Positions 4,773 through 8,939 of a DNA stretch of 54,810 nt are shown here, piece by piece. A model generated the notes under the pieces. That model was not told the origin of the DNA. It worked only from the letters and a program-made list of their open reading frames with translations, and searched no databases. The position numbers and the translations under genes were made by a program. Every line of letters begins with the position of its first letter. Within the stretch, counting starts at the first letter, position 1. Source of the stretch: Octopus bimaculoides (Eukaryota); assembly GCF_001194135.2 (NCBI RefSeq), contig NC_068992.1, positions 53,455,102 to 53,509,911 of the forward strand, written 5' to 3'.

Positions 4773-5915
4773 GCGCACACACACATGCACACGTGTTTAT
4801 ATACACACACACACACGTGTCTGTGTGTGTGTGTATATGTATGTACATACATTTATATATGCATTTATAGAAACATATACACATATATAACAGAAGGAAA
4901 CAGTTATTTACAAGGTCCCACATACTGGGGGTAAACCGGTAAATTCAATTACATAGATAACAGCATTTCACAAGCTTCTATATTATACTTGCTTTTGGTG
5001 GCTGAATGCTAAACTCCCTTACTGAGAGTGAACTCATTATATAAGAATAAGAAATAAACATATATCTCAAGTTTTAATACTTTTGCCAAGCTGCATGTTA
5101 TTATAATAAGGTTCCTAGTTTAGGCTCCTAGACCTCATTTTTATTCTTCATTTCGTCCTCCTCGAAGAAAGGGGGATACATTTGACCTCAACGGGTTTTG
5201 AACAGACAACGTAAAGAGTGAGAACAAACATCACAACGCATTTTTCCGATGCTGTTAATCAATCTCGCAGCTCGCCTTGTCTAGTAATAATACTTTCTTC
5301 TAAAAGCATAAGGTCTGAAATGTTGGTGGAGGAAACTAGTCGATTACATGGAACCAGTGCAAAGACTGCAGGCAAATTCGACCTCGGCGGAATTCGAGCA
5401 CAAAACGTAAAGACAAACGAAATGCTGCTTAGCATTTTGCCCATTGTGCCTGCTCGCCGCCTTATCCTTGTCTCGTAATAAATATTGATGGTTTCAAATT
5501 TTGGCATACGGCCAGCATGTTCGTGGCGCGGGGTTTAAGTCGATTACATGAACGTGGTGCTTAACCGGTACTTATTCTATCAACCCTGAAAGGATTAAAA
5601 GCAAAATCGATTTGGGCAGAATTTGAACTCAGAACCTGAAGAAAAAACGAAATGCCCTAAAGGATTCTGTCCCACGTGTTAAGGAATCTGTTAGCTTACC
5701 GCTACAGTAATAGTTTCAAATTTTAGCACAAGACTAGCAGTTTCGGGGTGGTGGGCAAATCGATTACATCGATTCCAGTACGCGAACGGTACTTCTTTTA
5801 TGGGGCCCGAAAGGATGGAAAACAATGTCCACTTCGACGGAATTTAAACTCCGAAGGTAAAGACAAAGGAAATGCCTTTAAGCAATGTTTCCGGTGTGAT
5901 CAACAGCTCGCTGCC

Positions 5916-5950
<35 letters not shown>

Positions 5951-7430
5951 CCTTTCTACAAGGTCTGAAATGTGGGGAGGGGACTAGTCGATTACATCGA
6001 CCCCGAAAGGGTGAAAAGCAAAATGGAACTCGGACAAATTTGAACTCAGAACGTGAAAGACGGTAGAAATGTCGCTAAGCATTTTTTTTTCCGGCGCGGT
6101 AACGATTCTGCCAGCTTGCTACCTTCGTTTCGAAATTTTGGCACAAGGCCAGCAATTTCGGGTGGTGGGTGCATAGTCAGTTATATCGATTCCAGTGCTC
6201 AACGGGTACTTATTTTATCCAAAAGGATAAAAAGCAAAGTCGATCCCGATGGAATTTGAACTCAGAACGTAAAGACGGGTGAAATGTCGCTGAGCACTTT
6301 GCCCGAAATAATGATGATAATAATAATAATAATAATAATGATAATAATAATAATAATATGTAGGTACAAGGCTAGCAATTTTCCCGGGGGAGTCTTTTGT
6401 CGATTTCATCCGCCCAGTAAGTGGCTGATGTTTGTTTTTTAATCGTTCCCGGCGGGATGAAATCACAACTGATTTCAGTAGGATTTGAACCTAGAATGTG
6501 AATGTCTACATACCTAGATGCATGTTCTCCGGCGGTCTATCTACATTTTAATTGATAATAGTAGTAGTAGTGTTGGTGTTGGGGGTGGTGGTGGCTTCTA
6601 ATATAGGCAGAAGGTCAAAAGTATGAGGGGAGAGACAAGTCGATTACCTCGACTCCTGAACTTGTACCCTATGTCATCAACCCCGAAAGGGGACGGGCTC
6701 AGTGGTTCTTGATCTCAGAAACGTAACCAACCAAGAAAACGCCATCAAGCAACATGTCCGACGTTCGAAAAATTCTGAGGACTCGCTACCTTCAATAGTT
6801 TCAATTTTGATATGAAACAAGCAAGTTTATGGGAGTGAACAGGGTGTCAGTCGATTACACCGAGCCCACTGCTCAATTGATATTTATTTTATCGAGCTCG
6901 AAAGGACGAAATGGAAAGTCAACCTCGGAGACATTTGAATTCAGAATGTAAATTAAGAAGAAATGATACGAAGCATTTCGCCCAGCGTGCAAACTGTTTT
7001 CTCAGGTCACCACCTTAATAATCTTTTTTCCTATACGTACAAGACCTGAAATTTCGTGGGAGAGGGCTAGATGATTGCATCATCCCCAGTGCGAAAGGAT
7101 GACAGACCAAGTCAACTCCTGCGGAATCTCAACTTAGAATGGCAAGACGGACGAAATGCCATTGGGTATATCGATTCTGCCAGGTAGTCATCTTATTAAT
7201 AATAATAATTATCATTTCAAATTTTCGCCACAAGGGCAGCTTGGGAGAATTAGGAATGAATCGATTACATCGACGCCAGTGTTTCACTGGTACTTACTTT
7301 ATCGACCCCGAAAGGATGAAAGGCAAAGTCGACCTCAGTGGAATTTGAGCTCAGAATGGACCCACAGGCGAAATACCGCTAAGCATTTCGTCCAGCGTGC
7401 TAACAATTCTACCATATCCCTCCTTCATAA

Positions 7431-7645
7431 TCCTTTCTATTATTGGCACGCGACCTGATATTTGGGGGAGGCGGATAGTCGATTACATCGACCCCAGTGT
7501 TTCACTGGTACTTAATTTATCGACCCCGAAGGGATGAAAAGTAAAGTCGACCTCGGCGGAATTTGAACTCGGAACGTAACGGCAGACGAAATACCGCTAA
7601 GCATTTCGCCCGGCGTGCTAACGTTTCTGCCAGCTCACCGCCTTC
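7431..7645 (-). mobile_element. Best-preserved family D SINE copy (reference for the family)
   Basis: The - strand reads aaggcggtgagctggcagaaacgttagcacg...ccgagttcaaattccgccgaggtcgactttac... The A-box lies at about 7622-7632, the B-box at 7558-7570 and the hairpin gtcgattacatcgac at 7478-7492. Confidence 0.9.
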
Positions 7646-7875
7646 ATAATGATAATAAGAATGGTTTCGAAGCTTGGTACATGGCCAATAGTTTAGGAGC
7701 AAGGGGTGAGTCAATTGCATCGACCTCAGTGTTCAAAAGGATGAAAGGCAAATTGGAACACGGCGGAATTTGAACTGAGAAGATAAATACGGACGAAATG
7801 CTGCTGAGCATTTTGCGCGGTCTTGTAACGATTCCGCTAGTTTACCGTCTTTTAATAATTAGTTCTACTCTAAGC

Positions 7876-8263
7876 GGAGGCGCAATGGCCCAGTGGTTAG
7901 GGCAGCGGACTCTTGGTCATAAGATCGCGGTTTTGATTCCCAGACCGGGCGTTGTGAGTGTTTATTGAGCGAAAACACCTAAAGCTCCACGAGGCTCCGG
8001 CAGGGGATGGTGGCGAACCCTGCTGTACTCTTTCATCACAACTTTCTCTCACTCCTACTTCCTGTTTCTGTTGTGCCTGTAATTCAAAGGGTCAGCCTTG
8101 TCACACTCTGTGTCACGCTGAATATCCCCTGAGAACTGCGTTAAGTAAGGGTACACGTGTCTGTGGAGTGCTCAGCCACTTGCACGTTAATTTCACAAGC
8201 AGGCTGTTCCGTTGATCGGATCAACTGGAACCCTCGACGTCGTAAGCGACGGAGTGCCAGCAA
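7876..8263 (+). mobile_element. Family A tRNA-derived SINE, full length, nested in a family D copy
   Basis: It has a tRNA-like head (ggaggcgcaatggcccagtggttagggcagc...gcggttttgattccc), ends ...ggagtgccagcaa, and has a perfect 11-bp TSD ctactctaagc at 7865-7875 and 8264-8274. Two other copies lie in the window. Confidence 0.92.
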
Positions 8264-8939
8264 CTACTCTAAGCACAAGGCCTTGAAAATTTGGAGGGAA
8301 TGGGGGTAGTCAATTATATCGACCCCAGTGCGTAACTGGTAATTATTTCATCGACCCCGAAAGGATGAAAGGCAAAGTCGACATCGGCGGTATTTGAACT
8401 CAAAACGCAGCGGCAGACGAAATACCGCTAAGCATTTCGCCCGACGTGCTAATGATTCTGCCAGCCCGCCGCCTTCACCGCATTTTAATAGTAGCTATCA
8501 TAGAGGCACAGAGCAATAGTCAATTATATCGATTTTTCCCGTACATGACTGGTATTTTATTTTGGAAACAGAAAAATTCAAAGATGACCTCTACAGGATT
8601 TGAACGCATGACGTAATGAACCGTAACTACGTAACTGACTAATGATTCCGTCCGTCTATTAAATGCTGACATAAGGGCAGCGGTGATGGACAATACGGGA
8701 GGAACACAGACGTCGCTGCATAGTGGGTTACAGATTATGAGTGAGAAAGGGAGGGAGGCCTACAGATATAATATGTAGAAAAAGGTTTTGTGACCCAATA
8801 GGAGGTGCGGGGGACAGGAAAGGACCAATCAAGAAGTCAGATTACCCTGCTTGACTAGTGACGGCATTAACAGCTGTAGTAGCAAAACAACCACAGCCCC
8901 CAAAACGACCAGATAGCCTGTATATGGTGGCTCTGCATG

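What the first reader, a model, noticed from the sequence alone, without database searches (positions are those of the whole stretch)
5110..8660. Self-seeding SINE array: about 15 same-orientation copies, many stacked through TAA-rich tails
Seen: about 15 family D units lie head-to-tail on one strand, many separated by TAA-rich tracts (for example 5917-5950 and 6307-6357). Preservation ranges from well conserved (7431, 7862) to barely recognisable (5110, 6361, 8495), and copies carry private deletions. Inference: this looks like serial insertion rather than one tandem amplification. An element that targets (TTA)n and carries a (TTA)n tail would create its own next target, building a local chronological record of SINE subfamilies. 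Each copy carries internal Pol III boxes, so the array could also be a SINE RNA or small-RNA source.
Basis: partly seen in the sequence, partly recalled or inferred. Interest (0 to 1): 0.7.

Follow-up and report, generated by a model that had tools for sequence, protein, structure and literature searches.

The report
Stack of SINE-like retroposons built serially
Sixteen copies of one short (TAA)n-tailed retroposon sit head-to-tail because new copies kept landing in the tails of older ones over a long time; this is a large example of a known behaviour of SINEs, not a new kind of element.

Summary
A profile search finds 15 same-strand copies of a ~220-bp unit between 5110 and 8660. A 16th, decayed copy lies at 4910-5109. 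Only TAA-like tracts of 1-53 nt separate the units.

It is not one tandem amplification:
- Divergence from consensus spans about 9-fold (K2P 0.08 to 0.75).
- Array copies are no closer to each other than to copies elsewhere in the window, and array monophyly has 0/200 bootstrap support.
- A young subfamily is shared with a second stack 22 kb away on the other strand.
- Copy a02 is flanked by a 15/17-nt duplication of the end and tail of a01, so it inserted there.

Serial insertion into resident tails is therefore supported. "Targets (TAA)n" is only partly supported. Solitary copies have 13-16-nt target-site duplications at non-TAA sites, and only one of seven non-stacked copies abuts a real TAA tract.

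The claimed Pol III boxes are not found in this family. The "well conserved copy at 7862" is a family D copy split by an unrelated tRNA-Arg-like SINE (7876-8263, 11-bp duplication).

Head-to-tail SINE multimers are already described in rodents and bivalves. The organism and the partner LINE could not be identified with these tools.

The parts
4910..5109 (+). a00: 16th, most decayed family D copy. Its tail TTATTATAATAA abuts a01.
   Evidence: Collinear alignment to consensus positions 18-226, z=6.3, 0/300 shuffles, p-distance 0.36.
5110..5292 (+). a01: old copy lacking the GTCGATTACATCGACCCC block. Its end CCTT plus tail GTCTAGTAATAATA was the target of a02.
   Evidence: nhmmer E=3.5e-21; K2P 0.58.
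5293..5487 (+). a02: A-head copy with a ~29-nt internal deletion. It is flanked by the target-site duplication CCTTGTCTAGTAATAAT (5275-5291) and CCTTGTCTCGTAATAAA (5466-5482).
   Evidence: 15/17 identity. Alignment score 13.5 against a maximum of 8.5 for 13 mismatched flank pairs. K2P 0.21.
5488..5711 (+). a03: B-head copy.
   Evidence: nhmmer E=1.8e-50; K2P 0.28.
5712..5950 (+). a04: B-head copy with a pure (TAA)11 tail at 5917-5950.
   Evidence: K2P 0.27.
5951..6126 (+). a05: A-head copy with a deletion between the two ATCGACCCC repeats. It has no tail; a single base separates it from a06.
   Evidence: K2P 0.175.
6127..6358 (+). a06: B-head copy lacking its last ~45 nt, followed by an (AAT)17 tract at 6306-6358.
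   Evidence: K2P 0.28.
6359..6592 (+). a07: 5'-truncated, very divergent copy (or an older subfamily). Its tail has decayed into TAG/TGG repeats.
   Evidence: nhmmer E=1.9e-28; K2P 0.75.
6593..6796 (+). a08: old copy.
   Evidence: E=4.9e-33; K2P 0.43.
6797..7024 (+). a09: B-head copy.
   Evidence: E=1.2e-46; K2P 0.26.
7025..7212 (+). a10: A-head copy with deletions; tail ATTAATAATAATAATTAT.
   Evidence: E=9.8e-35; K2P 0.29.
7213..7430 (+). a11: member of the young subfamily (diagnostic consensus positions 152, 165, 179).
   Evidence: K2P 0.18.
7431..7662 (+). a12: youngest and best preserved copy; 14 of 15 consensus CpGs are intact.
   Evidence: E=6.5e-66; K2P 0.08.
7663..7862 (+). a13: B-head copy with an internal deletion. 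Its tail TTTTAATAATTAG (7850-7862) is the probable target of a14.
   Evidence: K2P 0.23.
7863..8494 (+). a14: young copy (7863-7875 plus 8275-8475) split by the nested SINE. Possible flanking duplication: TTTTAATAATTAG (7850-7862) and TTTTAATAGTAG (8483-8494).
   Evidence: K2P 0.11. The duplication is suggestive only; 2 of 13 control flank pairs score as high.
7876..8263 (+). Nested SINE of a different family (T). It has a tRNA-Arg-like head, a perfect A box TGGCCCAGTGG, a (CAA)-type tail and the 11-bp target-site duplication CTACTCTAAGC (7865-7875 and 8264-8274). It is not part of family D.
8495..8660 (+). a15: old, truncated copy forming the right edge of the stack.
   Evidence: E=6.3e-20; K2P 0.56.
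30254..31327 (-). Second, smaller D cluster on the opposite strand. In element orientation it reads: (TAA)21 (31327-31265), copy 31260-31139, copy 31124-30862, about 170 nt of other DNA, copy 30687-30490 (3'-truncated), then directly copy 30488-30254.
   Evidence: No D copy is detectable upstream of the TAA tract.
43323..43544 (+). Solitary old D-like copy with an (AAT)4 tail and a perfect target-site duplication AATAATTTCTTTTGAC (13-16 nt; its first 3-6 nt cannot be told from the tail).
33016..33199 (-). Solitary B-head copy with an imperfect ~16-nt target-site duplication (GTAGTACCATCGAGAT / GTAAGTACAATAGATAT) at a non-TAA site.
   Evidence: read by eye; the script picked a neighbouring repeat instead.
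27597..27793 (+). Solitary B-head copy with a minimal tail and no clear duplication.

Best explanation
Family D is a ~215-bp non-autonomous, LINE-dependent retroposon (SINE-like). Its 3' part has a conserved hairpin and ends in ...GCCGCCTT(C)A(TAA)n. The 4910-8660 array is a stack built by many separate retroposition events over a long period. An old founder inserted at an ordinary site. Later copies, from at least three subfamilies, integrated again and again at the body/tail boundary or inside the TAA-like tail of a copy already present. As a result, every new unit lies head-to-tail behind an older one with no other DNA between them.

**Shown:** the units are independent copies of different age and subfamily; at least one internal unit (a02) carries its own target-site duplication made from its neighbour's tail; solitary copies carry 13-16-nt duplications typical of target-primed reverse transcription.

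**Inferred:** the preference comes from the partner LINE's machinery, either its nicking preference for TTA/AT-rich DNA or annealing of the (UAA)n RNA tail to the nicked (TTA)n strand. Each insertion adds a fresh tail, so the locus becomes an ever better target. The preference is a bias, not strict site specificity.
For: **Anatomy.**
- There are 15 + 1 same-strand copies separated only by 1-53 nt of mostly TAA-like sequence.
- The only insertion that breaks a unit body belongs to a different family with a different tail.

**Age.**
- K2P to a leave-one-out consensus ranges from 0.08 to 0.75.
- CpG retention runs from 14/15 down to 2-3 of 11-15.
- Neighbours differ sharply: a11 0.18, a12 0.08, a13 0.23, a14 0.11.

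**Relatedness.**
- Pairwise distances inside the array equal those to outside copies.
- The top shared-derived pairs are a11-o30488, a14-o30488 and a12-o30700/o30488 (p 1e-7 to 4e-4).
- Diagnostic sites 152/154/165/179 define a young subfamily present in both stacks.
- In the NJ tree outside copies interleave with array copies, and array monophyly gets 0/200.

**Direct insertion scars.**
- a02 is flanked by CCTTGTCTAGTAATAAT and CCTTGTCTCGTAATAAA: 15/17 identical, no other copy has this tail, and the score is 13.5 against at most 8.5 in 13 control pairs.
- The a01 and a02 bodies are 46% different, so the matching flanks are not a shared duplicated unit.
- a14 has a weaker candidate duplication.

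**Retroposon nature.**
- Solitary copy 43323-43544 has a perfect 13-16-nt duplication with AATAAT at the priming side.
- Copy 33016-33199 has an imperfect ~16-nt duplication.

**TAA link.**
- Four of the ten TAA tracts of at least 12 nt in the window are followed directly by a D head.
- The second stack begins at the 3' edge of (TAA)21 with no D copy upstream.

**Contrast.** All three copies of the (CAA)-tailed family T are solitary, with 11-13-bp duplications at ordinary sites.

**Founder prediction.** The leftmost copies a00 and a01 are among the oldest, as tail insertion predicts.

**Hairpin.** The 3' hairpin CGAAATGC/GCATTTCG is paired in 85% of cells against 28-46% for slid controls.

**Literature.**
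- Dong elements, including one from a snail, target (TAA)n (PMC3812793).
Against: - Only 11 copies outside the array were available, so subfamily structure rests on few sequences. Bootstrap support for the young clade is only 28%.
- Very divergent units (a00, a01, a07, a08, a15) may belong to older related subfamilies, so their K2P overstates age.
- Preference for pre-existing TAA tracts is weak among non-stacked copies. One of seven has a match of at least 10/12 to (TAA)4 upstream, against 0.64% background, so P is about 0.04 (re-counted). At least four solitary copies with intact 3' ends have tails that were never hit.
- The a05|a06 junction (1 nt), the 3'-truncated a06 and the 30687-30490|30488 junction do not fit simple tail insertion.
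- For a02 the inferred first-strand nick lies just before the CCTT of a01, not inside TAA repeats.
- The a14 duplication is not significant on its own.
- No partner LINE, no genome-wide counts and no orthologous locus could be obtained.
Confidence: 0.72

Rival explanations
1. Tandem duplication, satellite-like: one D copy, or an A-head/B-head dimer, was amplified in place by unequal crossing-over or slippage between flanking TAA tracts. The units then diverged.
For: - Units abut exactly with no unique DNA between them.
- Head types nearly alternate in the 3' half of the array.
- a04 and a06 share more derived states than expected (p=1.3e-4).
- SINE arrays made this way are documented: TSD1-(SINE-TSD1)n in the blood clam and SINE-derived satellites in squamates (PMC11481361, PMC10702118).
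Against: - Ages span about 9-fold.
- The array is not monophyletic (0/200), and its units group with outside copies.
- The a04-a06 sharing is mostly B-head subfamily states also seen in solitary copies.
- Head alternation is not significant (P=0.15).
- Units do not share truncation points or a common inter-unit duplication.
- The a02 flanks are far more alike (15/17) than the a01 and a02 bodies (54% identical).
Confidence: 0.08
2. Concatemer cDNAs: during one retroposition event the reverse transcriptase reached the 5' end of one D RNA and jumped to another D RNA. Dimers or multimers would then be inserted at once. The stack would be a few such multi-unit events rather than about 15 single ones.
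For: - Some junctions lack a tail. a05|a06 has 1 nt, and their ages (0.175 and 0.28) do not differ significantly.
- The unit at 30687-30490 lacks its last ~25 nt and fuses directly to the head of the next unit. Both belong to the young subfamily.
- Units of different subfamilies in one event would be expected under this model.
- End-to-end template jumping by non-LTR reverse transcriptases is established biochemistry; I cite this from my own knowledge and did not check it here.
Against: - Most neighbours differ clearly in age, for example a12 at 13/168 differences against a13 at 28/143.
- a02 has its own duplication inside the array.
- Most junctions do carry a tail.
Confidence: 0.12
3. Regional hot spot without nucleotide-level targeting: open chromatin or weak selection let many D copies accumulate here by chance.
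For: The window is intergenic or intronic, very rich in microsatellites and repeats, and has no real coding ORFs.
Against: - This cannot explain 15 of 15 junctions in one orientation, with every insertion falling in the 7% of the span that is tail and never in a unit body.
- Family T copies in the same window are all solitary.
Confidence: 0.02

Closest known systems
Head-to-tail SINE multimers formed by integration into the tail of a resident SINE. Examples: Dip/B1 multimers of up to 8 units in the jerboa Allactaga bullata, and B2-B2, B1-B2 and B2-B1 dimers in mouse (PMC8466645; summarised in PMC10702118).
   Same: - Full or near-full units in one orientation, separated only by tails.
- Units of different subfamilies.
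- A large share of the family sits in multimers: here about 20 of 27 copies in the window.
   Different: - The tail is (TAA)n rather than A-rich.
- The stack has 16 units, twice the reported rodent maximum.
- Ages span about 9-fold.
- The host is an invertebrate-type genome (probably a cephalopod; unverified).
- The element lacks a recognisable Pol III head.
Tandem-like SINE arrays in bivalves: 4-15 units in Scapharca broughtonii, with structures TSD1-(SINE-TSD1)n and TSD1-(SINE)n-TSD1 (PMC11481361). Also SINE-derived satellites of squamates (PMC10702118).
   Same: Direct arrays of up to about 15 SINE units in a mollusc-type genome.
   Different: The bivalve and squamate arrays consist of highly similar units with the same truncation point and the same duplication, and are attributed to unequal recombination. 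Here the units are 20-55% divergent, belong to several subfamilies, and have different tails and private deletions.
Dong (R4 clade) non-LTR retrotransposons, which insert specifically into (TAA)n microsatellites. Examples: Bombyx Dong, Anopheles DongAg and the snail DongBg (PMC3812793). Dong-R4 LINEs are among the most abundant recently active LINEs in Octopus vulgaris (PMC13282606).
   Same: - A (TAA)n 3' tail.
- Association of new copies with TAA tracts.
- The capacity to build head-to-tail runs at a repeat target.
   Different: - D is non-autonomous.
- D also inserts at non-TAA sites with 13-16-nt duplications, so it is not strictly TAA-specific.
- No sequence link to any LINE could be tested.
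Non-tRNA-headed mollusc SINEs ('LP-SINEs' with a LINE-derived head; PMC4758252).
   Same: Short, tailed with simple repeats, flanked by variable target-site duplications, and without a tRNA-like head.
   Different: Whether the D head derives from a LINE 5' end was not testable here.

Membership tests
SINE (short LINE-dependent retroposon) | Short length (about 80-500 bp), many dispersed copies in both orientations | tested here: met
   The unit is ~215 bp plus a tail. About 27 copies or fragments lie on both strands of the 54.8-kb window.
SINE (short LINE-dependent retroposon) | Target-site duplications of variable sequence flanking individual copies | tested here: met
   - Perfect 13-16 nt at 43323-43544.
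- About 16 nt, imperfect, at 33016-33199.
- 15/17 nt around a02.
- None was found for 27597-27793.
SINE (short LINE-dependent retroposon) | 3' end with a simple-repeat or A-rich tail | tested here: met
   Copies end in ...GCCGCCTT(C)A followed by (TAA)n of 1-17 units.
SINE (short LINE-dependent retroposon) | [quoted passage not shown] | tested here: not met
   - ARAGORN finds none at default or 90% threshold; relaxed hits are scattered noise.
- Rfam gives no tRNA, 5S, 7SL or snRNA match even at E<=10.
- No match within 2 mismatches of GGTTCGANNCC on either strand.
- Only degenerate candidates exist: TGGCACAAGGC at position 15 and CATCGACCC at position 58.
- The nested family T passes the same tests.

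I therefore file D as 'SINE-like', not as a proven Pol III SINE.
SINE (short LINE-dependent retroposon) | 3' region shared with a partner LINE | not testable with these tools
   No reverse-transcriptase ORF or LINE fragment occurs in the window. No eukaryotic genome collection was reachable.
Head-to-tail SINE multimer made by tail integration | Units in one orientation separated only by tail sequence | tested here: met
   Fourteen junctions hold 1-53 nt of mostly TAA-like sequence. The a00-a01 junction is TTATTATAATAA.
Head-to-tail SINE multimer made by tail integration | Units are independent insertions of different age or subfamily, not one clade | tested here: met
Head-to-tail SINE multimer made by tail integration | An internal unit is flanked by a duplication of the upstream unit's tail | tested here: met
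   a02: 5275-5291 against 5466-5482, 15/17. a14 is suggestive only. For most other units the duplication would be indistinguishable TAA repeats.
SINE-derived satellite / tandem duplication array | Monomers highly similar, with the same truncation points and the same inter-unit sequence; the array forms one clade | tested here: not met
   Pairwise distances are 20-56%. Deletions are private and tails are heterogeneous. Monophyly gets 0/200.
Dong/R4-type (TAA)n-specific retrotransposition | Insertions confined to (TAA)n targets | tested here: not met
   Solitary copies with duplications lie at non-TAA sites. Only 1 of 7 non-stacked copies abuts a TAA tract. This is a bias, not strict specificity.
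Dong/R4-type (TAA)n-specific retrotransposition | (TAA)n 3' tail | tested here: met

The most novel reading that the evidence does not exclude
Family D may be mobilised by a TAA-preferring (Dong/R4-like) LINE. Every insertion would then create a new landing pad. Genome-wide, most D copies would live in self-propagating stacks whose size follows a rich-get-richer law. The family would be a main source of TAA microsatellites. Stacks like this one would be nucleotide-level examples of transposons building their own habitat, the 'ecosystem engineering' pattern proposed for octopus genomes (PMC12988792).
Probability: 0.25. Interest if true: 0.55.

Novelty: new member of a known kind. Interest (0 to 1): 0.35.

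Why it matters
- The locus shows, at base-pair resolution, old transposon copies steering where younger ones land. This pattern was recently proposed for octopus genomes as something still to be tested (PMC12988792).
- Such stacks inflate repeat content locally and seed and maintain TAA microsatellites.
- They confuse repeat annotation: tandem-repeat finders miss them, and annotation pipelines that merge adjacent matches to one consensus may fuse the units.
- They give a compact locus for presence/absence dating of SINE subfamilies across related species.
- This does not change what is known about how SINEs move.

Tried and rejected
**Attempts to reach genome-wide copies or identify the organism all failed.**
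- A protein search with the open frame of the D consensus and of the family T consensus gave no hits.
- An exact-ORF look-up found nothing on record.
- Sequence strings were searched in papers and in one supplement without result.
- A pattern scan of metagenome contigs gave one chance match, not family D.
- Scans of prokaryotic genome contigs and viral contigs gave nothing.
- The cephalopod or octopus origin is therefore only my recollection of what such genomes look like. It is not a tool result. Literature on octopus Dong-R4 LINEs applies only if that guess is right.

**Ideas tested and rejected or left open.**
- A dimeric A-head/B-head higher-order repeat is rejected: alternation P=0.15.
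- A target-site duplication flanking the whole array is not significant.
- No further decayed copy lies after 8660 or upstream of the other TAA tracts.
- RNAalifold predicted no consensus structure for the 3' region. Only a hairpin that I named myself could be counted, and it shows little covariation.
- A possible 10/12 duplication around the copy at 31124-30862 was seen by eye, but it is low-complexity and I do not rely on it.
- My first count of TAA-like flanks treated a01 as array-initial. After a00 was found the count drops from 2/7 to 1/7.

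
Full report
**1. What is there.**
Reading 4800-9000 shows repeated blocks such as GTCGATTACATCGACCCC, GGAATTTGAACTCAGAACG and GCCAGCTCGCCGCCTT, each followed by AAT/TAA runs. A profile built from five units, and then from all units, finds 15 collinear + strand copies between 5145 and 8656 (E 6.5e-66 to 6e-20). The repeat finder gives in-register families of 8-10 copies and no inverted repeats. 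TRF reports only the two long TAA tracts, 5917-5950 and 6307-6358, and no ~220-bp tandem repeat, because the units are too divergent.

A sensitive alignment shows a 16th, very decayed copy at 4910-5108. Nothing recognisable follows 8660. The region has no N gaps.

The majority consensus is 226 nt. It has a variable head in at least two forms:
- A: TCCTTTCTAC..AAGGCCTGAAATTTTGGGG
- B: ATGGTTTCAAATTTTGGCACAAGGCCAGCAATTTCGGGG

The head is followed by a conserved body and the end GCCGCCTT(C)A(TAA)n.

**2. Junctions.**
Between the body end of one unit and the head of the next there are 1-53 nt.
- Two junctions are long pure (TAA)n tracts.
- One 45-nt tract has decayed towards TAG/TGG repeats.
- Six hold 13-26 nt, mostly TAA-like.
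- Five hold 1-8 nt.

No other DNA intervenes. Tails make up 7% of the span. Chance placement of 15 same-orientation insertions only in tails is therefore excluded, at about (0.035)^15.

The single insertion that breaks a unit body is a different element. A 388-bp SINE at 7876-8263 is flanked by CTACTCTAAGC. It has a perfect A box and a tRNA-Arg-like head at relaxed ARAGORN settings. Its two other copies in the window (37347-37723 and 48368-48685, both on the minus strand) are solitary. Each has an 11-13-bp duplication at an ordinary site and a (CAA)-type tail.

**3. Duplication or serial insertion?**
- *Age.* K2P to a leave-one-out consensus is 0.08 (a12), 0.11 (a14), 0.18 (a05, a11), 0.21-0.29 (a02, a03, a04, a06, a09, a10, a13), 0.43 (a08) and 0.56-0.75 (a01, a15, a07). 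CpG retention runs in parallel, from 14/15 down to 2-3 of 11-15. a00 has a p-distance of 0.36 in an optimised local alignment.
- *Relatedness.* Distances among array units (20-56%) are no smaller than those to the seven outside copies that were aligned with the array. The pairs sharing most derived states are array-to-outside: a11-o30488, a14-o30488 and a12-o30700/o30488. Sites 152, 154, 165 and 179 define a young subfamily present in this array and in a second cluster 22 kb away on the other strand. In the NJ tree outside copies interleave with array units, and array monophyly is found in 0/200 bootstraps. The one notable within-array pair, a04-a06, shares mostly B-head subfamily states that solitary copies also carry.
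- *Higher-order structure.* A-head/B-head alternation is not significant (P=0.15).
- *Insertion scars.* I compared the 18 nt before each head with the 24 nt after each body, using mismatched pairs as control. a02 stands out with a score of 13.5 against at most 8.5. CCTTGTCTAGTAATAAT (5275-5291, the end and tail of a01) is repeated as CCTTGTCTCGTAATAAA (5466-5482) after a02. No other copy has this tail. The a01 and a02 bodies are 46% different, so this is a target-site duplication from a02 inserting into a01's tail between a01 and a03. It is not a duplicated unit. a14 has a weaker candidate (TTTTAATAATTAG / TTTTAATAGTAG), with 2 of 13 control pairs scoring as high.

**4. What kind of element, and what does it target?**
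Solitary copies behave as LINE-mobilised retroposons. Copy 43323-43544 has a perfect duplication AATAATTTCTTTTGAC (13-16 nt). The leading AATAAT merges with the (AAT)4 tail, which means microhomology at the priming side. Copy 33016-33199 has an imperfect ~16-nt duplication at a non-TAA site. The family is therefore not TAA-specific.

A link to TAA does exist. Four of the ten TAA tracts of at least 12 nt in the window are followed at once by a D head. The second cluster starts at the 3' edge of (TAA)21 (31327-31265), with no detectable D copy upstream of it.

Among copies that do not follow another D copy, only 1 of 7 has a strong TAA-like flank. Background is 0.64% of 20-nt windows, so P is about 0.04 (corrected). 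At least four solitary copies with intact 3' ends have tails that were never hit. The stack is thus better described as a bias that feeds on itself than as strict site specificity.

The 3' part carries a palindromic hairpin, CGAAATGC/GCATTTCG. It is retained in 85% of cells against 28-46% for slid controls, with little covariation (RNAalifold predicted nothing). Whether this hairpin is a recognition element for a partner reverse transcriptase is my inference.

**5. Pol III boxes.**
For family D this claim fails.
- ARAGORN finds nothing at default or 90% thresholds, and lower thresholds give scattered noise.
- Rfam gives no small-RNA match at gathering score or at E<=10.
- The consensus has no site within 2 mismatches of the B box on either strand, and only 2-mismatch A-box sites.
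- Only relaxed motifs remain: TGGCACAAGGC at position 15 and CATCGACCC at position 58.

D is therefore 'SINE-like'. Non-tRNA-headed SINEs are known in molluscs (PMC4758252).

**6. Exceptions.**
- a05|a06 has a 1-nt junction.
- a06 lacks its last ~45 nt.
- In the second cluster the unit at 30687-30490 lacks ~25 nt and its tail, and fuses directly to the next head.

These fit template jumping between two RNAs in one event, or later deletions, better than simple tail insertion. I keep this as a contributing mechanism for one or two junctions.

**7. Comparison with what is known.**
- Head-to-tail SINE multimers are documented. Nearly half of jerboa Dip copies sit in multimers of up to eight units, and there are tens of thousands of B2/B1 dimers in mouse. 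Integration into the tail of another SINE is one stated explanation (PMC8466645, PMC10702118).
- Bivalve arrays of 4-15 units, and squamate SINE satellites, consist of near-identical units and are ascribed to recombination (PMC11481361, PMC10702118). This array fails those criteria.
- Dong elements, including a snail one, target (TAA)n (PMC3812793). Dong-R4 LINEs are abundant and recently active in Octopus vulgaris (PMC13282606).
- Whether this window is from an octopus, and whether D uses such a LINE, could not be tested. Every route to other genomic copies failed.

**8. Verdict.**
The feature is real, and the core interpretation is right. The array is an unusually long (16-unit) and long-lived stack of independent retropositions. 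It is a new member of a known kind, of moderate interest. The genome-wide claims remain open.

Noticed in passing
window 7876-8263 (+), 37347-37723 (-), 48368-48685 (-): A second SINE family of ~380 bp. It has a tRNA-Arg-like head, a perfect A box and a (CAA)-type tail. All three copies are solitary with perfect 11-13-bp target-site duplications, and they are about 91% identical to each other. One is nested in D copy a14.
   Followed up: partly
window 30254-31327 (-): A second family D cluster on the opposite strand starts at the 3' edge of a (TAA)21 tract. It includes a tail-less fusion of a 3'-truncated unit to a unit with a third head type, which carries an extra ~25 nt (AGGGGACAAACAAGGACAGACAAAGGG).
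   Followed up: partly
window 4910-5109 (+): A very decayed 16th D copy lies directly upstream of the reported start, so the array begins about 200 bp earlier than stated.
   Followed up: yes
window, 13 N runs (e.g. 3635-4504, 14464-15011, 16204-16591, 17776-18316): The window is a gapped draft scaffold with 3270 N. One D copy (16592-16705) is cut by a gap, so more copies may be hidden.
   Followed up: no
whole window: Microsatellite density is extreme, with 243 TRF rows in 55 kb, mostly AC/TG, AT, TC and ATAC types. No credible protein-coding ORF is present; the listed ORFs of at least 90 aa look like low-complexity or gap read-through, and none was searched against a protein-family library.
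   Followed up: no
window 32297-32461 (+): A compound microsatellite, (ACT)28 directly followed by (TAA)27, not associated with any D copy.
   Followed up: no
window 52001-54000: Strong G-over-C strand bias (GC skew 0.45-0.58) in the last 3 kb. The cause was not examined.
   Followed up: no
D consensus positions ~57-66 and ~89-98 (e.g. window 7489-7497 and 7521-7529): An internal direct repeat, ATCGACCCC, brackets a ~30-nt segment. Several copies (a02, a05, a10, a13, 27597) lack this segment with slightly different end points. This points to recurrent deletion between the repeats rather than one shared indel.
   Followed up: partly
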